A DNA stretch of 64,000 nucleotides, from the IMG/VR virus record IMGVR_UViG_3300034117_001294, positions 1 through 64,000 of that record. One strand, given 5' to 3'. Position numbers and translations under genes: made by a program. The notes under the pieces are model-generated. The model was not told the origin of the DNA. It did no database searches and worked only from the letters and a program-made list of their open reading frames with translations. Below, one piece after another: positions 1,553 to 49,400 of this stretch (within the stretch, counting starts at the first letter, position 1; each line of letters starts with the position of its first letter).

Positions 1553-3949
1553 ATGACAACAAGAATCAAACTACGTAGAGATACAGCCGCTAATTGGACT
1601 ACTAACGATCCAGTATTGGCCTTGGGTGAAGCAGGCTATGACACTACCAATAATGAACTGAGAGTAGGTGACGGTACTACGGTATGGAGCGGATTAGAAT
1701 CTATTGGCGGCACTGGTGATAAAATAACAGCAGAGAAAACTTATTCAGACAATTACAATGACGGTAGTGAACACACTTTCGCCTATACCACTGGATCTAT
1801 TGCTGTACAGATGGGGAATGATAACGGACTGTATCTCAATGATCTGTTGTCAAGATGGGTGGAGTATTTTGATGGCAATCTTGCCTTTCCCTATAATTAC
1901 AGCAACATCAACCTAGTGATAAATCCCGGCACTGATGATCTCGCATCAACAGTGACCAATGTAATCTCTAGTGGTAATCCACCATTGTACACCATAACAC
2001 TGGGCACAGCACACCCAGAGCCTATAACAATAGATGACATTGATTTTAATTACACCTACGTTAACACCATTGGGTTGGACATAGTTAACGGTGATGGTGA
2101 AAGTAACAGTTACTTTGGCATGGCTACCGGTGACGATGATATAACTATTCGTTCAGGAAGAGATATTACGTTAGACGCCGCAGACGATGTTTACATATCA
2201 GGAGGCAATGAATTTCAGTTAACACTTGTAAACCAAGATGACATGAGTGCCAGTAGCGGAATTGATATTCGCACAGAGACCACATCAACTGACTACACAT
2301 GGACATTTAGGTTTGATGGCAGTCTAGAACTACCGGAAGGCTTGACTCTGCCAACTAAAAATAACAAGGGCTATGATGTCACTACCAACCTTAACGCACC
2401 AACACTACAGTTAAGCAACGACAGTCAAAACCAAGTTATCGTCACAGGACCAACAGCTACAGAAAACAACACCAATGCTCAACGTATTGTGATCCAAGGC
2501 CAGCGTGGCTACGGCTCAACCAGCACCACAGGTGAAGGCGGCGATGTTTATATCTGGGGAGGAGTTGGCGGTGAAACCAACAGTAACAGTAATGGATGGG
2601 GCCAAGGTGGCGGCAGTGGTGGTGATATTAAACTACGCGGTGGCGAAGGCCTTAACGACACAGGTGGTTATGTTAGGATTGAAGGTGGCAATGTTGCTCA
2701 CTTTAACACTTCTACCACAGGCAATCCTGGATTTGTGGAAATCACCGGCGGTGATGTAGTCATTGAGAATGCCGCAGGCAGTAGTTATGGTGGCGATGTT
2801 AGAATCACAGGCGGTCGTGCTTACACAGCAACCACACAGTCTGGAGTTGTACAGGTAATCACAGGCGGCTACGCCAATGGTGATGTTCTTGGTGCCAATA
2901 CTTGGACGTTTGCTAACGATGGTACTCTAACAGTACCGGGCGATATCCTTGACAGTGAAGGCGTTAGTGTATATATCGACACAGCGGATAGTCAATGGAT
3001 TGTCGACCCAACTAATACGGGCACATACACCGCTGATGGCAGTTTACACAAACCTTTCAAAACTATCGCGTCGGCATTGGCCTATATTGAAGCAAGGATT
3101 GCTGATACTAGTTTAGTAATTGACATAAACGGTTCTATCGTTGATAACCCACAGTTTATTTTCCTAATGAGTTCTATCACAGAGGATGTGGCGTTGACTC
3201 GTGGAAATATTTTTATCCGTAGCGAAACTCCCGATGCTGGCCATGTACCTATTTGGATTGAGGGACATGTTACTATTACTCCGGCAAACACCGGCACAAA
3301 CGCTATAAACGTTAATAGATTTGGCCTATTTAATATTGCCGTACGTACAACCAGTTCGAATCACGGTATCGAGTTAACTGGATCTAATCCAGCAAAACTT
3401 TACCTAGACGATGTATACTGTTATCAAAACGATGCCACCAAGAGTTGTGTTTATGCGGATAACACTGGCACAGGTAGCAGAGTGGAAATGAATGATTGTC
3501 ACATGGCTAGAGCCGGTGGCTCTGTATATCTAATAGATATCCAACGTGGATTTTGTATTATAAACAATCTCGAAACTAACGGTACGGGACAAGTACTTAA
3601 CCAAGCAAACGATTCATTAGGAACTATGCTGAGAAGTTCATTGGATGCCAACACTGGCTCCGTTATTACCCTAAGTGGTTCAGTACAATGGGGTATGGGT
3701 GAAGTTATTCTTAACAACACTGGAGCAGGGGCCGATACTCACGGTGTTACTATGAGTGACTCGGCAACCATGCAGTTTGGTGTGTGTACATTTAACATAC
3801 CAGTTGGAGATGGTTCAAATCGTGCTATCAACGGTACTGGTACAAACACGGTACTGTATGCTGATCCAATATTCCAATATGGTTCAACTAACAAGATATC
3901 AACTGAGATTACATTAGTTCCGTTGACTAAAACGTTTACAGCGGTATAA
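1553..3949 (+). CDS. Tail fibre / receptor-binding protein with Mtd_N-like N-terminus
   Basis: N-terminus RIKLRRDTAANWTTNDPVLALGEAGYDTTNNELRVGDG; Gly-rich middle; beta-helix-like C-terminus. Confidence 0.75.
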   Translation: MTTRIKLRRDTAANWTTNDPVLALGEAGYDTTNNELRVGDGTTVWSGLESIGGTGDKITAEKTYSDNYNDGSEHTFAYTTGSIAVQMGNDNGLYLNDLLSRWVEYFDGNLAFPYNYSNINLVINPGTDDLASTVTNVISSGNPPLYTITLGTAHPEPITIDDIDFNYTYVNTIGLDIVNGDGESNSYFGMATGDDDITIRSGRDITLDAADDVYISGGNEFQLTLVNQDDMSASSGIDIRTETTSTDYTWTFRFDGSLELPEGLTLPTKNNKGYDVTTNLNAPTLQLSNDSQNQVIVTGPTATENNTNAQRIVIQGQRGYGSTSTTGEGGDVYIWGGVGGETNSNSNGWGQGGGSGGDIKLRGGEGLNDTGGYVRIEGGNVAHFNTSTTGNPGFVEITGGDVVIENAAGSSYGGDVRITGGRAYTATTQSGVVQVITGGYANGDVLGANTWTFANDGTLTVPGDILDSEGVSVYIDTADSQWIVDPTNTGTYTADGSLHKPFKTIASALAYIEARIADTSLVIDINGSIVDNPQFIFLMSSITEDVALTRGNIFIRSETPDAGHVPIWIEGHVTITPANTGTNAINVNRFGLFNIAVRTTSSNHGIELTGSNPAKLYLDDVYCYQNDATKSCVYADNTGTGSRVEMNDCHMARAGGSVYLIDIQRGFCIINNLETNGTGQVLNQANDSLGTMLRSSLDANTGSVITLSGSVQWGMGEVILNNTGAGADTHGVTMSDSATMQFGVCTFNIPVGDGSNRAINGTGTNTVLYADPIFQYGSTNKISTEITLVPLTKTFTAV

Positions 3950-40546: not shown

Positions 40547-41316
40547 ACTGCAATATTGATCGCCTGCGGGCACGTATCTTCCATGGCTTAAAAAGTCTGC
40601 TCAGTGACGGTGACACATTGCCTCCTCGATTCCTTGAAGTAGCAATTTGTGAGAGCTTTGGATTAGAACACGTAGGCGACGGTAACTTTTATGCTGACGG
40701 CGTTAAAGACAAGATGCAGGCTAGTATCAAAACTCGCATGATGAATCCTCACTTGTTAAAGCGTAAACAAGGACGAGACTTTCAAACAGACCCTGCTATG
40801 TTTCTTGGTCCTAAACAAAACAAAAAACATAAAAAGTTTTGGGCAGGATTGGAAATTGTACAGCGTCGACAAGCATTGCCGTTTAAAGATGCTACAGCGG
40901 CAGCAGTTAAAATTGGAACTGCAACTCTCGAAGCTTTTCAAACTAACATTAAAGAAAGTTTTGAAAAGTTTGATACTGATAAGAGTTATGAGATTGTAGG
41001 TGTACACGGGTATTCAATTGAAGGCGATTACATTGTCAGCCTTTACTGGCACGAATATGCTCCTATTGATCCAGCTACTATCAAGTGGACTAAAGAAGGT
41101 TACGGAGTAACTGGCTATGCAAAAGTAGGTGATCAAAGCATGGTGGTCTGTGAGCGTATTAACGGCAATGCCAAACGCGAAGCTACTTGTTATAAAGAAT
41201 ACAAAAATTTAACCAAGCTGCCTAACAGTATTCACATCAAAGTTCCATTGCCAACTCCGTGGTCTTTTAACGAGGCAGAAATTCTTAAAGAATTAAACAG
41301 TGTCAGTAATTGTTAA
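40543..41316 (+). CDS. Hypothetical protein
   Basis: 257 aa ORF; ATGA overlap. Confidence 0.55.
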   Translation: MNCNIDRLRARIFHGLKSLLSDGDTLPPRFLEVAICESFGLEHVGDGNFYADGVKDKMQASIKTRMMNPHLLKRKQGRDFQTDPAMFLGPKQNKKHKKFWAGLEIVQRRQALPFKDATAAAVKIGTATLEAFQTNIKESFEKFDTDKSYEIVGVHGYSIEGDYIVSLYWHEYAPIDPATIKWTKEGYGVTGYAKVGDQSMVVCERINGNAKREATCYKEYKNLTKLPNSIHIKVPLPTPWSFNEAEILKELNSVSNC

Positions 41317-41530
41317 AATTCATTGGTCTCGTGAATTTGAAAACGAGAAGATGTGGAACGAAGTATGTATATGGGCAATTGAGTACTTTGGTTTGCCCGG
41401 AGATCGATTTGAAACCCGGGCAAACGTCAATTACATGGAATTCATTTTTAAGAGCCGTAAAGATGCACTCCTTATGTCTCTTAGGTGGAACGCAGAGTTA
41501 CTTGAACCAGCCGACTTTGAGACCGTTTGA
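41300..41530 (+). CDS. Small protein, distant member of LRW cassette family
   Basis: W...FG..G.RF...F.F....DALLMSLRW. Confidence 0.55.
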   Translation: MSVIVKIHWSREFENEKMWNEVCIWAIEYFGLPGDRFETRANVNYMEFIFKSRKDALLMSLRWNAELLEPADFETV

Positions 41531-41917
41531 TATACGGTGTTGCCATTCTTCAACGCTGCCTGGATAACGCCAAGCCCACACAGCACACAGCATCATAAAC
41601 AATCCTGTGCCTGCTACCGCTTTCCAATTATAGGTAGTAAACCAAATAATTAGTAAGCTACAATCCATAGTAATGAACATGGCCCATTTGGCCTTAGTGG
41701 GGAACACACGCTTCTCGCCCCAGTTGCTCAAGAACGGTCCAAATAACTTGTGATTCATAATCCAGTTGTGCATACGTTCGCTTCCTCTAGCAAAACAGAA
41801 TGCGGCAATCACTGTGGGAGTCGACCACGGGATACCCGGAGTTACGATTCCGATGTAGGCAATGCCTAGGAATATAAATCCCAGTGTTACCCAAAATGCT
41901 TTTTTAATTTTATTCAT
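41498..41917 (-). CDS. ybaN: YbaN/DUF454 membrane protein
   Basis: LGIAYIGIVTPGIPWSTPTVIAAFCFARGSER.HNW...H..FGP.L.NW. Confidence 0.8.
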   Translation of the reverse strand: MNKIKKAFWVTLGFIFLGIAYIGIVTPGIPWSTPTVIAAFCFARGSERMHNWIMNHKLFGPFLSNWGEKRVFPTKAKWAMFITMDCSLLIIWFTTYNWKAVAGTGLFMMLCAVWAWRYPGSVEEWQHRISNGLKVGWFK

Positions 41918-43107
41918 AATATTTCCTTTAAACTTCGTGTTAGATAATCAATGTCTGCTTCTGTGTGATTAGGAGTTGGAGTTGCACGAAGTCGTTCTGC
42001 ACCCCAAGGTACCGTTGGATAGTTGATGGGCTGAAGATATATAGCACGTTCTTCTAATAGCCAGTCACTGATATGTTTGCATTTTCTAGCATCGCGAATC
42101 ATAATAGGAACAATGTGCGTATCACCTGGCATCACGTCGATATCGTTTGACAATAAATGTTCTTTAGTTTGTTGTGCTACATTAAAAATTCGTGTTCTAA
42201 GTTCAGGATGATCTGCAACGTACTTAACACTGGCCAATGCCCCGGCACATAGTACCGGGCTCATGGATGTGCTAAAGATAAAGCCTTGTGCATAACTGCG
42301 TACCATATCAATTAAGTCACGCCCGGCGGCAATATAGCCTCCTTGAACTCCGTAGGCTTTGGCCAGTGTTCCTTGAAACACGTCAACACCTTCTACGCAT
42401 CTCTGCTCTTCGGCAACTCCGGCACCGCGACTGCCATATAGTCCTACAGCATGTACTTCGTCAACATAAACCATTGCACCGTATAATCGAGCAATATCAC
42501 AAACATCACTAATCAGTCCTTTATCTCCGTCCATAGAATATACACCTTCCATTGTAATGATAGGTTGTGCGTCAATAGACATAGTCTGTAGTATTTCTTT
42601 TAAGTGTGCAAGATCATTGTGTCGCCAAACTGTAACAGGTGCTTGACTGCTTTTCATTCCTACAATCATACTGTTATGATTATTACTATCACTAATGTAA
42701 TGTGCTCCGGGTATCATGCGACCCATAACACTCAATGCAGCTTGATTGGCCACATATCCGCTAGTGAACAATAACGCACTGGTCTTGTCATGCAGCTTGG
42801 CTAACTCCCATTCAAGTGCTACATGATAATGTGTAGTTCCTGAAATGTTTCGTGTGCCTCCCGAACCTGCACCTGCTGTATCTAATGCTGTGTGCATTGC
42901 GTCCAATACTACTTTGTGCTGGCCCATGCCCAAGTAGTCATTTGAGCACCAGTTGGTTATGTGTTTGATATTGTATTTGCCATAGTAAACCGCTTTCGGA
43001 AATTCTCCTCGTTCACGAAGGATATCAGTGAATACTCGATAATTTCCTTCAGTCTTGAGTTTTTCCAAACTCTGTCCTATAGCGTCTTGTGTTTTTGGCT
43101 TTATCAT
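41914..43107 (-). CDS. hemA: 5-aminolevulinate synthase (Shemin/C4 pathway)
   Basis: WCSNDYLGM, GAGSGGTRNISGT, FTSGYVAN, VYSMDGD, DEVHAVGLYG, GTLAKAYG, FIFSTS, INYPTV. Confidence 0.9.
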   Translation of the reverse strand: MIKPKTQDAIGQSLEKLKTEGNYRVFTDILRERGEFPKAVYYGKYNIKHITNWCSNDYLGMGQHKVVLDAMHTALDTAGAGSGGTRNISGTTHYHVALEWELAKLHDKTSALLFTSGYVANQAALSVMGRMIPGAHYISDSNNHNSMIVGMKSSQAPVTVWRHNDLAHLKEILQTMSIDAQPIITMEGVYSMDGDKGLISDVCDIARLYGAMVYVDEVHAVGLYGSRGAGVAEEQRCVEGVDVFQGTLAKAYGVQGGYIAAGRDLIDMVRSYAQGFIFSTSMSPVLCAGALASVKYVADHPELRTRIFNVAQQTKEHLLSNDIDVMPGDTHIVPIMIRDARKCKHISDWLLEERAIYLQPINYPTVPWGAERLRATPTPNHTEADIDYLTRSLKEIL

Positions 43108-43148: not shown

Positions 43149-44177
43149 ATGGCTAAAACAACTGAAATTGAATTTGACGGTAAAGACATAGTGCTGTTAG
43201 ACGACGATTTAAACTACACTACGCATACAGTAGAATCTGTATTAAGTAAAGATCTGTCATTTTGGAAGGGCTGGCATTGTGCAATTGGCCTTCGATCGCT
43301 CTATATTGATTATGAAGGAAATGTAGTACGAGGAACCTGCAGGGAAGGTGGGGTAGTTGCTAACGTATACAAGAAATCCATTCCGTTAGACATTGCAATA
43401 GGTAATAAATGGACAGTTTGCGGAAAGCAGATATGTTCTTGCGGTGCAGATATGGCTGTGCCTAAGGTAAAGCATCAAGAAAGCATACTGAGATTTTTTG
43501 ATTCTAATAAAATTAGAGAATTCGATCTTAACTACAAATTGCCCAAAGTAGACGCAGAAGTTGTATATTCAACCAACTACAATTATAAAACCATAACATG
43601 GGCCATAGGCCGTAGATGTAACTTTGACTGCTGGTATTGTCCAGAAAGCGATCACAATAACTTTGAAGCACACAAAGATTACGACACTTTGATGTCTGCT
43701 TACAATATATTATCAACTCAATGGATCAAAGGTGAACCTACTAAGTTCAGTATGCTAGGCGGAGAACTGACTGTATATAAAGACTATCTGCCATTTGTTA
43801 AAACCTTAAGAAAAGACGGTCATGGATCTATCACTACAACAAACGGTAGTAGAGATGCTGCCTATTATGCAGAGCTGGCACAGGTTAGCGATCTATGCTT
43901 TAGTTTACATTTGAATTACTTAAAAACTTTAGGGATTGAAAAGTTTGTAAAAAGTATAGATGCTGCTATTCGAAATAAGGCTGAGAATTTTATTCGAATC
44001 CGCTTAATGGTAGACCCGGGTAATTTGGAATATGCTAAAGAAGTACACGAAATACTATTAGAAAAGTTTAATGGTCGTTGCCTAATCGCTATCAAACCTG
44101 TCCATGACACACAAGGTAAATTATTTCCATACGAGCCAAAAGAGATCATTTGGATACAAAACCCTATTGACAAATAG
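43149..44177 (+). CDS. Radical SAM protein with N-terminal Cys-rich SPASM/twitch-like domain
   Basis: CNFDCWYC and MLGGE in C-terminal half; GWHCAIG..IDYEGNV..C..C....CSC in N-terminal half. Confidence 0.75.
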   Translation: MAKTTEIEFDGKDIVLLDDDLNYTTHTVESVLSKDLSFWKGWHCAIGLRSLYIDYEGNVVRGTCREGGVVANVYKKSIPLDIAIGNKWTVCGKQICSCGADMAVPKVKHQESILRFFDSNKIREFDLNYKLPKVDAEVVYSTNYNYKTITWAIGRRCNFDCWYCPESDHNNFEAHKDYDTLMSAYNILSTQWIKGEPTKFSMLGGELTVYKDYLPFVKTLRKDGHGSITTTNGSRDAAYYAELAQVSDLCFSLHLNYLKTLGIEKFVKSIDAAIRNKAENFIRIRLMVDPGNLEYAKEVHEILLEKFNGRCLIAIKPVHDTQGKLFPYEPKEIIWIQNPIDK

Positions 44178-44195
44178 CATTCTTAATGCTATACT
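44167..44195 (+). promoter_or_regulatory. sigma70 promoter
   Basis: TTGACA-17-TATACT. Confidence 0.8.
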
Positions 44196-45087: not shown

Positions 45088-45529
45088 GAAAGTTGGCCGC
45101 CGGTATATTCCAGTAGCCGAATATGATAACATGTTGCTAGACAGTTTCCCGAAAGGTGACCACCTAGTTATGTGTTACCCTGGTGGATCTAGCCGCAGAT
45201 TCAACATCGATCCACACTATGCACCTATGATTGCGGCTGGCCGTGTTGCTGAAGATGCTATCAGTAAAGCAGTGGTCAAAGCCAGCGAGATGCGTCCCCA
45301 CCGTACACCCATTACTGAGAAGCAACGTAAGGCTTGGGAATCTCTGGCCAAAGCATTTGACAATGATCGCTACTACATTGAAATCCCTAGTGCAAGAGAA
45401 ATTGCCGAAGCGGGAGTTAAAGCAATGATTGATGAAGCCGACAAACTAATGGAGCACGAAAGTGTACGCAAAGCCTACGATCATTTCCAACTAATGTGTA
45501 AATTGGTTAAAGAAAACGAACGTGAATGA
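45065..45529 (+). CDS. Hypothetical protein
   Basis: MTKKIYYEKVGRRY; start reassigned. Confidence 0.55.
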   Translation: MTKKIYYEKVGRRYIPVAEYDNMLLDSFPKGDHLVMCYPGGSSRRFNIDPHYAPMIAAGRVAEDAISKAVVKASEMRPHRTPITEKQRKAWESLAKAFDNDRYYIEIPSAREIAEAGVKAMIDEADKLMEHESVRKAYDHFQLMCKLVKENERE

Positions 45530-46302
45530 CTCGCTTTTTATTATTGATGCTAGTTTGCGGATCTGTTTGGGCTAAACCGTTACCTCAAAGTGTGTTGCTG
45601 TACAACGATACTACCGGACACCACCTAATTCAATCTAATGCAGACACTGTTCGTCCTATTGCCAGTATTACTAAACTAATGACTGCTATGGTTACGTTAG
45701 ATTATGACAAAGACCTTACCCGCACATTAAAATCTGCAGGCAAAGTCGGAGGAATACTGCCTCGAGGTACGTGGACACGAGGAGAGGTGATGCACGCCAT
45801 GTTGATTCGCAGTGACAACGATGCTGCCGAAACATTAGCAGCAGATTACCCCGGAGGTCGCAGTGCCTTTTTGGCAGCTATGAACGCTAAGGCTATATTA
45901 CTCAATATGCCTAACGCTAATTTTGGAGATCCGAGTGGACTCGATTCTAAGAATGTTACAACATTGCTCGGAGTTAAACGCTTACTGTTGGCAAGTTCAG
46001 AGTATCCTATTATCCGAGAAATTAGTGTAAAGAAACAGGCATTGTTTGATCATCGATTTAAAAAGAAAATACGTAAGATCGAATTACCAAATACCAACAA
46101 AGAATTATTATTTGAGTTTGACAATATTGTTGTGACTAAAACAGGACTAACTAATCCTGCAGGTTGGTGTTTAGGTATGGTTGTAGAACAGGGTGGACAA
46201 AAATATGTCATAGTAATTTTAGGTGCTAGAAATAAATTAGAGCGACTTAAAATTGCCAAAGAAATCATGTACAATAACATAACAGATACGGATTTGCGAT
46301 GA
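45526..46302 (+). CDS. Peptidase S11 (PBP7/DacA-like D-Ala-D-Ala peptidase) with signal peptide
   Basis: SITK (SxxK), SDN (SxN), KTG. Confidence 0.88.
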   Translation: MTRFLLLMLVCGSVWAKPLPQSVLLYNDTTGHHLIQSNADTVRPIASITKLMTAMVTLDYDKDLTRTLKSAGKVGGILPRGTWTRGEVMHAMLIRSDNDAAETLAADYPGGRSAFLAAMNAKAILLNMPNANFGDPSGLDSKNVTTLLGVKRLLLASSEYPIIREISVKKQALFDHRFKKKIRKIELPNTNKELLFEFDNIVVTKTGLTNPAGWCLGMVVEQGGQKYVIVILGARNKLERLKIAKEIMYNNITDTDLR

Positions 46303-47521
46303 TATTAGTTGATCACGAGTATCATGTTGTTGAGTTACACACATTTAAGATACCACCTGCAGAAATGTTTGAGTGGCTACAACTTAAATTCGGTCCGGGT
46401 GACGGTTACCGTTGGATGTACAAGCATCCTAAAATTTATTTTGCAGATCCAAAAGATCACATGATGTTTTTGTTGAGGTGGTCATGAATCGTACTCACTT
46501 GGATTATGAAGTATTTCTAGACTCCGGACTACACAATAAGGCAGGACGATGGTGTGCCCAACAGTTCGGACAGCGTTGGGAAGTAATAGGTTTTCAATCC
46601 GGGCGTTGGTCAATGTTTTGGGGCGGAAGAGATAGCCCGGGCAAGTATAGATTTTGTTTTGCCCATGAGCAAGACAAGCTGATGTTTATGTTGAGGTGGT
46701 CATGAATATTGAACAAAGTGTAATTAACGAAGCAGCTCGCCAAATGGCTAAAGCTATTGACGATGAGTTACTAATGACCACAATGGGGTGGCACAAACTA
46801 GAACTAAGCGAAGGTACTGTTTACGGTTCTCGATATCTAACTGTACATCCTAACAACGGCTGGCACTGGAATGAAATGATGGATTGGACAGTAAAGACAT
46901 TTGGACCCACAGCACACGACGGAGTCTGGACACCTAACATGCGTTGGTATGCTAACAATGCTAAATTTTGGTTCCGAAATGAAAAGGATCGTACAATGTT
47001 TATTCTGAGGTGGGCATAATGGCCAGTATTAATACTATTATTGGCAGTGCTGAAACAGAGCCCGAAATCCAGCCAATGCAAACTGGCAAGGCCAAAGGTT
47101 GGATTGGTGAGTATCATTGGGTTAGTCTTCCTGTTACTGATCAAAACAAATACGAAAACACAACTGAGTTAGCCACTGAATGGTGTCGAGATCAGTTTGG
47201 TAAGAGTGGTGCTCGTTGGTTTGAAAAAGAACGTAAATTCTATTTCAAAAGTGAGAAGGACATGACTATGTTTATTCTGAGGTGGTCGTGAGTGATACAG
47301 CAAGCTGGATTACATTTGGTAAAGAACGGTATTGGCAACATCCAGACATGGAACAATGGTGCCACGAACATGTAGGAACCGGTGGTTGGTCCTATCAGAC
47401 TCCTGAAACTTGGGAAGGCATGAATGGTAAGATTTGGGTCATGCATAGTATGTTTGGTAATACTACATTTGCCTTCAAGGATGCTAAACATTTAACAATG
47501 TTTTTATTAAGGTGGTTATAA
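46299..47521 (+). CDS. Tandem array of five small paralogs ending in MF(L/M/I)LRWx (46299-46487, 46484-46705, 46702-47019, 47019-47291, 47288-47521)
   Basis: Shared W..W...FG...RW...F.F...D..MF.LRW pattern; each stop overlaps the next start. Confidence 0.75.
46464..47521 (+). repeat. Five 24-nt junction repeats ATGTTTWTNYTRAGGTGGKYRTRA
   Basis: Copies at 46464, 46682, 46996, 47268, 47498. Confidence 0.8.
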
Positions 47522-47585
47522 TGGAGTTGACAAAATTAAAAAAATTTGTTAAAGTATTAGATAAACATACAGAAAGAATTTTATC

Positions 47586-47804
47586 ATGACTATGGATCAA
47601 GCAGCGACCTGGTTAGCAGGCAGTATTTTAACAATGTTAGGTTTTATTGTAGTAATTGGTGCAGTATTGGTAATCAACAATCTACTGCATAAGTATTGGA
47701 AACCAGTGCAATTCTTTAAATGGGCAGAACATCCTTCTACTCGTTTTATGACGGAAGAAGAAACTACAAAGATTGCACCAGTAATAGACCAACAGAATAA
47801 ATGA
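47586..47804 (+). CDS. Small membrane protein
   Basis: One TM helix. Confidence 0.55.
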   Translation: MTMDQAATWLAGSILTMLGFIVVIGAVLVINNLLHKYWKPVQFFKWAEHPSTRFMTEEETTKIAPVIDQQNK

Positions 47805-48377: not shown

Positions 48378-49400
48378 ATGTCAAAAAAATATGATACCCT
48401 TGTCCTCATCGGACGTTTTCAACCGCTTCACTCAGCTCACTTAGAGATTATCAAGCGAGCCACAGCACTAACTGATCAACTTGTGATCATCTGCGGTAGT
48501 GCTAAACAACCCCGAACTTATAAAAACCCATTTACATTCGATGAACGTGCTCGAATGATCAAGTCAGCAACTGCTGGACTTGCTATGCAGATCTATGTTG
48601 AGCCAAATATTGACACTATCTATAACGATCAGGCATGGGCTGTTCGTGTCCAAGGTATTGTTTCTAAATACCGTGTACTAGGTGGTGCCGGAGTGGGCAT
48701 TATCGGTCATAAAAAAGATGACAGCTCATTCTACTTGGATATGTTCCCACAGTGGGGCTATGAAGATGTTGAATTAGTAGAATTCCTCAGTGCTGTAAAC
48801 ATTCGCGATCTCTACTTCAAGCGTGATGTCAATATGAAGTTCATTAAAGGTGTAGTGCCAGAGTCTACTTTAGACTTTTTGGAGCAGTTCCGCACCACAG
48901 ATCAATACGAACAGATCATCCGCGAACGTGAGTTCATCATAGAACACAATAAACAATATGCTGGATTGAAGTATCCTCCGATCTTCTCAACTGCTGATGC
49001 TGTGGTTATCTGCTCAGGACATGTATTAATGATTCGTCGTCGTGCTGAACCCGGTAAAGGATTGTGGGCATTGCCAGGCGGCTATGTTAACGCCAATACG
49101 GATAAAAGCGTAGAGGATGCAGCCATTCGTGAACTGCGTGAAGAAACACTAATTAAAGTTCCTGCTCCGGTGTTGCGTGGTAGTATTAAACGTAGTAAGG
49201 TCTTTGATGCAGTTGACCGTAGTCCGCGAGGTCGTATTATCACTCACGCATTCCACATTGAACTGCCTGACGGCGAGCTGCCAAAGGTAAAAGGCGGCGA
49301 TGATGCTGAAAAAGCACGTTGGGTTCCTATTGCCGAAGTTCGCAGTGAAGAATGTTTCGAAGACCACTACGAAATCATACAACACTTCTTGGGAGCATAA
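48378..49400 (+). CDS. nadM: Bifunctional NMN adenylyltransferase / ADP-ribose pyrophosphatase (NadM-Nudix)
   Basis: IGRFQPLHSAH, NPFTFDER, GHKKD.SS.YL, LPGG, Nudix box AIRELREET, DDAEKA.W. Confidence 0.93.
   Translation: MSKKYDTLVLIGRFQPLHSAHLEIIKRATALTDQLVIICGSAKQPRTYKNPFTFDERARMIKSATAGLAMQIYVEPNIDTIYNDQAWAVRVQGIVSKYRVLGGAGVGIIGHKKDDSSFYLDMFPQWGYEDVELVEFLSAVNIRDLYFKRDVNMKFIKGVVPESTLDFLEQFRTTDQYEQIIREREFIIEHNKQYAGLKYPPIFSTADAVVICSGHVLMIRRRAEPGKGLWALPGGYVNANTDKSVEDAAIRELREETLIKVPAPVLRGSIKRSKVFDAVDRSPRGRIITHAFHIELPDGELPKVKGGDDAEKARWVPIAEVRSEECFEDHYEIIQHFLGA

What the first reader, a model, noticed from the sequence alone, without database searches (positions are those of the whole stretch)
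46299..47521. Five-gene LRW array in which the conserved C-terminus is the next gene's ribosome-binding site
Seen: five divergent paralogs all end ATG TTT WTN YTR AGG TGG KYR TRA. The Leu-Arg-Trp codons always spell (G/A)AGGTGG, a Shine-Dalgarno match, 3-8 nt before the next start, which overlaps the stop (ATGA, TAATG, GTGA). Arg is always AGG although five other codons are available. Inference: each gene is a self-coupling cassette whose 24-nt junction serves as coding sequence, RBS and recombination homology at once, allowing accordion-like gain, loss and shuffling of a diversified small-protein family, possibly anti-defence or host-binding. A sixth, distant member is at 41300.
Basis: partly seen in the sequence, partly recalled or inferred. 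Interest (0 to 1): 0.6.

Follow-up and report, generated by a model that had tools for sequence, protein, structure and literature searches.

The report
Phage gene array with coding RBS
Five small related genes of an uncultured lake phage each end in Leu-Arg-Trp codons that also spell a strong ribosome-binding site for the next gene. In related phages, whole genes of this family have been gained, lost or swapped exactly at that short junction.

Summary
Five head-to-tail paralogues (46299-47521) all end MF-x-L-R-W-x-stop, Arg is always AGG, and each stop overlaps the next start.

The window is the first 64 kb of a 229-kb uncultured lake-phage record. That record holds two more members: 41300-41530, and one outside the window.

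The family is large (more than 1,000 metagenomic and viral relatives) and matches no named family. It folds as a small beta-alpha-beta-beta-alpha domain whose last helix ends in L-R/K-W.

AGG is 7% of Arg codons in this genome. The conserved internal Arg-Trp of the same genes uses CGT. In 89 homologues the terminal Arg is AGG in 60%, against 6% elsewhere in the same genes, and mostly where a start follows within 4-10 nt.

The array junctions have the strongest anti-Shine-Dalgarno pairing of 144 stop/start junctions in the genome.

Between close relatives, single family genes or blocks are present, absent or replaced, with breakpoints inside the junction motif. One close relative has at least 11 members (12 counting one seen only by its C-terminal motif) where this phage has 5.

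So the motif serves three ways: protein helix end, ribosome-binding site, and recombination point. Each of these is a known principle; the combination in one motif is a new variant. Protein function remains unknown, and nothing was tested experimentally.

The parts
46299..46487 (+). Member 1 (62 aa). Its start overlaps the stop of the upstream Peptidase_S11 gene (ATGA). Its own upstream ribosome-binding site is weak (-3.3 kcal/mol).
   Evidence: AlphaFold2 model pLDDT 85.9, beta-alpha-beta-beta-alpha
46484..46705 (+). Member 2 (73 aa); ATG overlaps member 1's TGA.
46702..47019 (+). Member 3 (105 aa). It has orthologues in 44 viral contigs.
47019..47291 (+). Member 4 (90 aa); start in a TAATG overlap.
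47288..47521 (+). Member 5 (77 aa); GTG start in a GTGA overlap. An orthologue has ATG at the matching place.
46464..46487 (+). Junction 1: the last 8 codons of member 1. GAGGTGGTC pairs 9 bp with the 16S 3' end (-14.1 kcal/mol); AGGTGG at 46476-46481.
46682..46705 (+). Junction 2: AGGTGG at 46694-46699, -14.1 kcal/mol.
46996..47019 (+). Junction 3: AGGTGG at 47008-47013, -10.7 kcal/mol. Relative to the close relative L046, a 1.9-kb block of six genes is missing here.
47268..47291 (+). Junction 4: AGGTGG at 47280-47285, -14.1 kcal/mol. L046 has two extra genes here.
47498..47521 (+). Junction 5: AGGTGG at 47510-47515, about -10 kcal/mol. It precedes only a 22-codon ORF.
47521..47589 (+). 22-codon ORF that starts in the TAATG after member 5 and ends in an ATGA overlap with the 72-aa gene at 47586. 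It is either a real mini-gene or a leftover junction. A promoter-like site lies inside it (47527-47555).
41300..41530 (+). Member 6 (76 aa), solitary. L-R-W is internal (AGGTGG at 41483-41488) and followed by 13 residues. The next gene is on the other strand.
45526..46302 (+). Upstream neighbour: secreted-type D-Ala-D-Ala peptidase (Peptidase_S11). It holds the same position in the close relative L046, which anchors the synteny.

Best explanation
The region is a tandem array of an uncharacterised, phage-specific family of small cytoplasmic proteins. Each is one beta-alpha-beta-beta-alpha domain, sometimes with an N-terminal extension.

The last helix of the domain ends in Phe-x-Leu-Arg/Lys-Trp and is usually followed by exactly one residue. 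This is a protein-level constraint.

On top of that constraint, codon choice (Leu ending in G, Arg = AGG, last codon NCA or NCG) turns these codons into (G/A)AGGUGG(UC). That sequence is a strong Shine-Dalgarno site 5-8 nt before a start codon that overlaps the stop. A ribosome finishing one gene is therefore held and restarts on the next (termination-reinitiation coupling), so the whole array is translated as a chain.

Every member carries the same 9-24-nt junction at its 3' end. Short-homology recombination between junctions can therefore delete, insert or replace whole genes while leaving the reading frame, stop/start overlap and ribosome-binding site intact. This explains the very variable arrays in related phages.

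Shown here: the paralogy, the motif, the codon bias and its link to a nearby start, the predicted pairing energy, and the junction-bounded indels.

Inferred: that the site is used by ribosomes, that translation is coupled, and that recombination (rather than selection on random events) places the breakpoints.

The proteins' function is unknown. My guess is that they are dispensable accessory or host-interaction proteins built on a conserved core with variable surfaces.
For: Paralogy and family:
- Seven members in the record.
- 1,083 relatives in the word search, all unnamed and almost all ending L-R/K-W-x.
- Model with pLDDT 85.9; the motif sits at the end of helix 51-61.

Codon layer:
- AGG is 7.1% of Arg codons genome-wide.
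- Internal Arg-Trp is CGT TGG in members 1-4 and 7.
- In 89 non-redundant members the terminal Arg is AGG in 39 of 65, against 23 of 382 for other Arg codons (p = 6e-23) and 6 of 59 at internal Arg-Trp (p = 4e-9).
- AGG is 36 of 49 with a start 4-10 nt downstream, against 3 of 16 without (p = 2e-4).
- Trp is followed by exactly one residue in 70 of 84 members.

Binding strength:
- The array junctions score -14.1, -14.1, -14.1 and -10.7 kcal/mol. They are the top of 144 stop/start junctions (median -4.7).
- Swapping AGG for CGT in silico drops the value to -3.5.
- Huber et al. (PMC6728339) count anything below -8.4 as a strong site and show that such sites often matter for reinitiation.

Cassette behaviour:
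- L042, L041 and L043 have about 90% identical flanks with nothing, a 212-nt gene or an unrelated 188-nt gene between them. The breaks fall at TTGAGGTGG.
- L019 has a 218-nt gene flanked by 16-nt junction repeats that is absent in three relatives.
- L038 and L040 have about 97% identical flanks and differ by a 204-nt gene. L040 carries a hybrid of the two L038 junctions.
- The window against L046: six genes are absent at junction 3 and two at junction 4.
- The same arrangements recur in independent contigs.
Against: - No expression, ribosome or recombination data exist; the host and its 16S tail are unknown.
- Most other overlapping gene pairs of this phage have weak sites, so a strong one is evidently not needed for coupling in this system.
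- Member 6 keeps AGG without any downstream start.
- One clade of member-3 orthologues uses AGA with no binding site.
- Homologues are phylogenetically related, so the p-values overstate independence.
- Viable indels in a tightly overlapped array would be filtered to gene boundaries by selection even without homology-guided recombination.
- The array of this phage is invariant in contigs from four lake metagenomes.
Confidence: 0.65

Rival explanations
1. Concerted evolution only. The junction is kept uniform (including AGG) because recombination between junctions keeps copying it from gene to gene. It has no role in translation.
For: - Junction-bounded indels and a hybrid junction show that exchange happens there.
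- Other gene pairs in the genome manage with weak sites.
- Member 6, and member 5 (followed only by a 22-codon ORF), keep AGG without an obvious gene to serve.
Against: - The paralogues are 27-44% identical and each has its own orthologues. The Leu and last codons differ between junctions, so the junctions are not being homogenised wholesale.
- The favoured variants are exactly those that lengthen pairing with the 16S tail (G-ending Leu, AGG, TCA).
- The spacing to the start is fixed: one residue follows Trp in 70 of 84 members.
Confidence: 0.13
2. Protein constraint plus shared ancestry. L-R-W is conserved for folding, and the resemblance to a ribosome-binding site and the AGG codon are incidental.
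For: - Trp or another aromatic residue, and a basic residue, persist with non-binding codons and in solitary members.
- The motif ends a predicted helix.
Against: - The same dipeptide inside the same genes uses CGT.
- AGG is enriched ten-fold at the terminal position only, and mainly where a start follows.
- At 30-40% protein identity, synonymous sites should be randomised.
Confidence: 0.07
3. AGGTGG at the junction is a signal for something other than the ribosome: a site for a phage recombinase or endonuclease, or for an RNA-binding regulator.
For: - Breakpoints cluster in the motif.
- The motif is much stronger than the genome's usual ribosome-binding sites.
Against: - No recombinase or nuclease gene is linked to the arrays examined.
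- No conserved RNA or DNA hairpin covers the motif.
- The sequence and its spacing to starts fit the canonical anti-Shine-Dalgarno tail.
Confidence: 0.08

Closest known systems
Termination-reinitiation coupling at ATGA/TGATG overlaps with a Shine-Dalgarno site inside the upstream gene (Huber et al. 2019, PMC6728339; review PMC12548453)
   Same: Co-directional genes have overlapping stop and start. A strong site sits in the last codons of the upstream gene at the usual spacing. Synonymous codon choice at the 3' end is bent to serve the downstream gene.
   Different: Here the site coincides with a family-wide conserved protein motif, so it is inherited with every paralogue. It is far stronger than at the genome's other overlaps, and it is repeated at every boundary of an array.
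PeSL (promoter-early stem-loop) cassettes of T4-type phages (Arbiol et al. 2010, PMC2839356; Comeau et al. 2014, PMC4122927)
   Same: A short conserved expression signal is repeated between small dispensable genes of a plastic region. Indels and replacements between close relatives are bounded by the signal. Exchange occurs between otherwise unrelated sequences.
   Different: PeSLs are non-coding promoter-plus-terminator units. This junction is 9-24 nt of coding sequence plus a ribosome-binding site and stop/start overlap, with no promoter or hairpin. It belongs to one protein family rather than flanking unrelated ORFans. Mini-circles were not looked for.
Integron gene cassettes (attC sites)
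   Same: Arrays of small promoterless genes are gained, lost and reordered at a repeated boundary element.
   Different: There is no attC-like imperfect inverted repeat at the junction. No integrase gene was called or hit next to the arrays; an integrase was not searched for directly. The boundary here is coding.
Unnamed viral protein clusters (BFVD entries such as A0A6J7WGD3 from 'uncultured Caudovirales phage'; ESM Atlas clusters of 50-180 members)
   Same: Same fold and family: TM 0.75-0.82 against the model, all viral.
   Different: None of these has a name, a function or a described junction.

Membership tests
Translationally coupled overlapping gene pairs (termination-reinitiation) | Co-directional genes with a 4-nt or 1-nt stop/start overlap | tested here: met
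   The overlaps are ATGA, ATGA, TAATG and GTGA, with a further TAATG after member 5.
Translationally coupled overlapping gene pairs (termination-reinitiation) | A Shine-Dalgarno motif in the 3' end of the upstream gene, within about 12 nt of the start, with strong predicted 16S pairing | tested here: met
   Values are -10.7 to -14.1 kcal/mol against a canonical 16S tail. The threshold for 'strong' in PMC6728339 is -8.4. The host's own 16S is unknown.
Translationally coupled overlapping gene pairs (termination-reinitiation) | Downstream translation depends on translation of the upstream gene | not testable with these tools
   This needs a reporter with a premature stop. No RNA or ribosome data were found.
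PeSL-type mobile regulatory cassettes | A composite sigma-70-like promoter plus a stem-loop terminator | tested here: not met
   The junction carries no promoter and no hairpin. The paired probability over the motif ranges from 0.19 to 0.83 with no pattern.
PeSL-type mobile regulatory cassettes | Indels and replacements between close relatives are bounded by the repeated motif | tested here: met
   Alignments A4-A8 show this at the four sharply mapped boundaries (A4-A7); at A8 it is less sharp, within about 15 nt of the junction. One relative has a hybrid junction.
PeSL-type mobile regulatory cassettes | Excised mini-circles formed by exchange between neighbouring motifs | not testable with these tools
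   Only assembled contigs were available.
Any named protein family (Pfam, PHROGs, PDB) | A significant profile or fold match | tested here: not met
   - Pfam and PHROGs gave nothing below E = 0.03.
- The PDB profile search gave a best E of 0.66.
- Foldseek against PDB gave no match at E <= 0.001.
- VIA-align gave a best Z of 4.6, matching generic two-layer alpha/beta folds.

The most novel reading that the evidence does not exclude
The L-R-W junction is a coding counterpart of the PeSL element: a portable gene boundary. A protein helix end, a strong ribosome-binding site, the stop/start overlap and a recombination microhomology are one and the same 16-24 nt. Any member of the family can then be dropped into or cut out of any array, in any related phage, and be expressed at once. 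The family would owe its spread (more than 1,000 members, arrays of up to 14) to this self-contained junction as much as to what the proteins do.
Probability: 0.35. Interest if true: 0.7.

Novelty: new variant of a known kind. Interest (0 to 1): 0.6.

Why it matters
The finding gives a concrete, testable example of one short sequence under three constraints at once: protein structure, translation initiation and recombination.

It also suggests how large phages keep fast-changing arrays of small accessory genes expressible. Every cassette brings the ribosome-binding site for whatever lands behind it.

It defines a large unnamed viral protein family with a recognisable signature (W-x3-F-G ... 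R-W ... F-x-F ... D-x3-F-x-L-R/K-W-x-stop). This could be used to find plastic regions in metagenomic phage genomes.

The junction could also serve as a compact coupling linker in synthetic operons.

The principles involved (a ribosome-binding site inside the upstream gene; shuffling at repeated signals) are already known, so this is an extension rather than a new category.

Tried and rejected
- Pfam, PHROGs and a PDB sequence profile gave no family.
- Megablast and tblastn against 50,697 cultured-phage records found no match for the region or for member 3.
- Synechococcus phage B23, the closest cultured phage by its NMN adenylyltransferase (52% identity), has no family member.
- Foldseek against PDB, VIA-align wide, BFVD and the Atlas gave only a generic fold or unnamed viral proteins, so no functional lead.
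Single proteins were used instead.
- I tested whether an RNA hairpin hides the binding site to enforce strict coupling. There is no consistent pairing, so I dropped the idea.
- I looked for an attC-like or other inverted repeat at the junction and found none.
- Reads: only Logan contigs were available. The 'joints' have sides of 22-25 nt and come from other phages that share just the junction. I do not count them as deletions in this phage.
- The T4 gp23 capsid family was not found in the record, but the search also failed its controls, so it says nothing about the phage type.
- I did not run the large representative protein search. Relatives are plentiful and that library carries no names.

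No other genetic code was used.

Full report
**What is there**

The window is bases 1-64000 of a 228,849-bp IMG/VR virus record with 39.6% G+C. The same DNA recurs in at least 24 lake-water metagenome runs.

Between 46299 and 47521 lie five same-strand ORFs of 62, 73, 105, 90 and 77 codons. Each ends Met-Phe-(Leu/Met/Ile)-Leu-Arg-Trp-(Ser/Ala/Leu)-stop.

Each stop overlaps the next start: ATGA at 46484 and 46702, TAATG at 47019, GTGA at 47288. An orthologue has ATG where member 5 has GTG, which supports that start. The first member's own start overlaps the stop of a Peptidase_S11 gene.

The five are 27-44% identical. Leaving each protein out of the profile in turn still recovers it, with E from 5e-6 to 3e-15.

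**The protein family**

Pfam and PHROGs give nothing. The word search returns 1,083 relatives at E <= 0.01. All are unnamed and come from metagenomes and viral contigs. Nearly all end in Phe-x-Leu-Arg/Lys-Trp plus one residue.

An AlphaFold2 model of member 1, built on a 44-sequence alignment, has mean pLDDT 85.9. It is a beta-alpha-beta-beta-alpha domain, and Leu-Arg-Trp closes the last helix, residues 51-61.

Structure searches find only unnamed viral proteins (BFVD and ESM Atlas, TM up to 0.82) or generic two-layer alpha/beta folds in the PDB (best Z 4.6). The function is therefore open.

The closest cultured phage by its NMN adenylyltransferase, Synechococcus phage B23, has no member. In three other large uncultured records all members sit in one region of 2-4 kb.

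**Is the C-terminus a ribosome-binding site?**

With Arg = AGG, the last codons read (G/A)AGGTGG. With Ser = TCA or TCG after Trp, they read GAGGTGGTC. That sequence can pair over 9 positions (one G-U) with the canonical 16S 3' tail.

The predicted duplex energies upstream of members 2, 3 and 5 are -14.1 kcal/mol, and upstream of member 4 it is -10.7. These four are first, second, third and fifth of the 144 stop/start junctions in the whole record, whose median is -4.7. Neighbouring non-family starts score -0.9 to -8.3.

Replacing AGG in silico by the genome's preferred CGT gives -3.5, so the site depends on that codon. Huber et al. treat values below -8.4 as strong. They found that removing such intragenic sites reduced reinitiation in four of five E. 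coli pairs (PMC6728339).

**Codon evidence**

AGG is 7.1% of Arg codons in the record. The family has a second conserved Arg-Trp in the middle of the domain. In members 1-4 and in member 7 it is CGT TGG every time. This rules out a general AGG-TGG codon-pair preference.

I collected 44 viral loci around orthologues of member 3. I found 143 family ORFs in them with a profile, 89 of them non-redundant. The counts are:

- The motif position is Arg in 65 members and Lys in 9.
- Terminal Arg is AGG in 39 of 65. Other Arg codons in the same ORFs are AGG in 23 of 382 (Fisher p = 6e-23). Internal Arg-Trp is AGG in 6 of 59 (p = 4e-9).
- With a start 4-10 nt after the Arg codon, AGG is 36 of 49. Without one, it is 3 of 16 (p = 2e-4).
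- The preceding Leu is TTG in 29 of 49 against 3 of 16.
- Trp is followed by exactly one residue in 70 of 84 members. This keeps the spacing to the overlapping start constant.
- Two further contigs add 18 terminal Arg codons, 15 of them AGG.

There are caveats. The sequences are related, so the p-values are too optimistic. One clade of eight member-3 orthologues uses AGA. There, AGA-TGG itself contains an ATG that may start the next gene, and no binding site is present. Member 6 keeps AGG with nothing to serve.

The protein layer is independent of the codon layer. Trp (or Tyr) and a basic residue remain where the codons are AGA, CGN or AAA, and in some members His, Thr or Gln replaces Arg.

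**Is the junction a recombination point?**

Around the member-3 orthologue, the 44 loci carry 1-7 members drawn from 31 subfamilies, with different neighbours and order.

The contigs called 'closely related' in the comparisons below share about 90-97% identical flanking DNA, or 93% identical orthologous proteins in the case of L046. Six comparisons between such contigs map or suggest breakpoints at the junction.

(a) L042, L041 and L043 have about 90% identical flanks. Between the same two genes they carry nothing, a 212-nt family gene, or an unrelated 188-nt family gene. Homology stops at TTGAGGTGG and resumes at the stop/start overlap.

(b) L019 has a 218-nt family gene that is absent from L013, L022 and L024. 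It is flanked by 16-nt direct repeats of the junction.

(c) L038 and L040 have about 97% identical flanks and differ by a 204-nt family gene. The single junction of L040 has the left half of one L038 junction and the right half of the other. The crossover lies within the shared GGTGGTCAT.

(d) L046 is a close relative of the window's phage. Its member-4 orthologue is 93% identical and it has the same Peptidase_S11 gene upstream.
- It has at least 11 family members (12 counting one seen only by its C-terminal motif) where the window has five.
- At junction 3 the window lacks a 1.9-kb block of six genes. Its junction reads like the body of L046's member 3 joined to the junction of the last gene of that block.
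- At junction 4 two more genes (about 680 nt) are absent. The boundary there is less sharp, within about 15 nt.

(e) L047 has 12-14 members, counting by the profile or by the C-terminal motif.

(f) Orthologues of the solitary member 7 (86-93% identical in protein) are followed by at least four different genes straight after the same junction.

Several of these arrangements are seen in two or three independent contigs. The repeats are 9-19 nt, shorter than typical assembly k-mers, so assembly chimeras are unlikely. I did not check the assemblies themselves.

Against a fast 'accordion', the five-gene array is identical in contigs from four other lake metagenomes. The apparent joints there are 22-25-nt matches of other phages' junctions.

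**How it most likely works**

The family's fold fixes Leu-(Arg/Lys)-Trp at the very end of the protein. Selection on synonymous sites turns this into a strong ribosome-binding site wherever a gene follows with an overlapping start.

The ribosome that terminates on one gene is held by 16S pairing and reinitiates on the next. Since all members end alike, unequal or inter-genome exchange between junctions moves whole genes and always rebuilds a working boundary.

The first part is an instance of termination-reinitiation coupling (PMC6728339; review PMC12548453). The second parallels PeSL-mediated modular shuffling in T4-type phages (PMC2839356, PMC4122927). The difference is that here the signal is coding and translational, not a promoter-terminator unit. 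No promoter or conserved hairpin lies at the junctions.

A promoter-like site at 44167-44195 could drive the whole overlapped block from 44220 onwards. Another, at 47527-47555, follows the array. Both are only consensus matches.

**Rivals**

- Homogenisation by recombination without any role in translation remains possible. It does not explain why the favoured variants are those that extend 16S pairing at a fixed spacing.
- Pure protein constraint is contradicted by the internal Arg-Trp control.
- A non-ribosomal reader of AGGTGG has no support.

**Verdict**

It remains unproven experimentally, and it says nothing yet about what the proteins do. I rate it a new variant of known kinds, with moderate to fairly high interest.

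**Housekeeping**

No genetic code other than table 11 was used. 

Noticed in passing
window 41914-43107 (- strand): A phage-encoded 5-aminolevulinate synthase: TIGR01821 at 533 bits against a cut-off of 339. A DUF454 membrane protein (41498-41917) follows on the same strand. This is an unusual haem or tetrapyrrole auxiliary metabolic gene for a phage.
   Followed up: partly
window 47521-47589: A 22-codon ORF (MELTKLKKFVKVLDKHTERILS) starts in the TAATG after the fifth junction and ends in an ATGA overlap with the 72-aa membrane-like gene at 47586. A promoter-like TTGACA-17-TAAAGT with an upstream TG lies inside it (47527-47555). It could be a mini-gene or a relic junction.
   Followed up: partly
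record position 98283-98576 (outside the window; L001 1784-2077): This is the seventh, solitary family member. It ends Leu-Lys-Trp-Gly with AAG TGG GGA TGA, then T and the next gene's ATG. All 8 distinct orthologues use AAG (genome baseline 34%). At least four different genes follow the same junction in relatives 86-93% identical in protein.
   Followed up: partly
window 45526-46302: A D-Ala-D-Ala endopeptidase/carboxypeptidase (Peptidase_S11) with an N-terminal signal-like segment, encoded by the phage directly upstream of the array. It is conserved at that place in the relative L046.
   Followed up: partly
window 43149-44177 and 48378-49400: A radical SAM protein with only weak similarity to viperin and MoaA models, and a bifunctional NMN adenylyltransferase/Nudix enzyme 52% identical to that of Synechococcus phages B3 and B23.
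   Followed up: partly
L013, L016, L019, L024, L029 (orthologues of member 6, about 2590-2790): Orthologues of the solitary sixth member have decayed C-termini (Leu-Arg-Cys-Gly, Leu-Thr-Cys-Gly, Leu-Ala-Arg-Gly, Leu-Thr-Arg-Gly) and mostly non-AGG codons. The motif appears to be relaxed where no gene is coupled behind it.
   Followed up: no
L013, L017, L022-L027 (end of the member-3 orthologue, about 3300-3330): In the clade ending Leu-Arg-Trp-Gln, the Arg codon is AGA, so AGA-TGG contains an ATG. The downstream gene may start there (Met-Ala-Met-Ile-Tyr...), an 11-nt overlap with no ribosome-binding site. This is a different dual use of the same two codons.
   Followed up: partly
whole record (genome-wide): Ribosome-binding sites are generally weak in this phage. 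The median is -4.7 kcal/mol at 144 stop/start junctions, against -3.3 at random in-gene positions. This hints at a host that relies little on Shine-Dalgarno pairing.
   Followed up: partly
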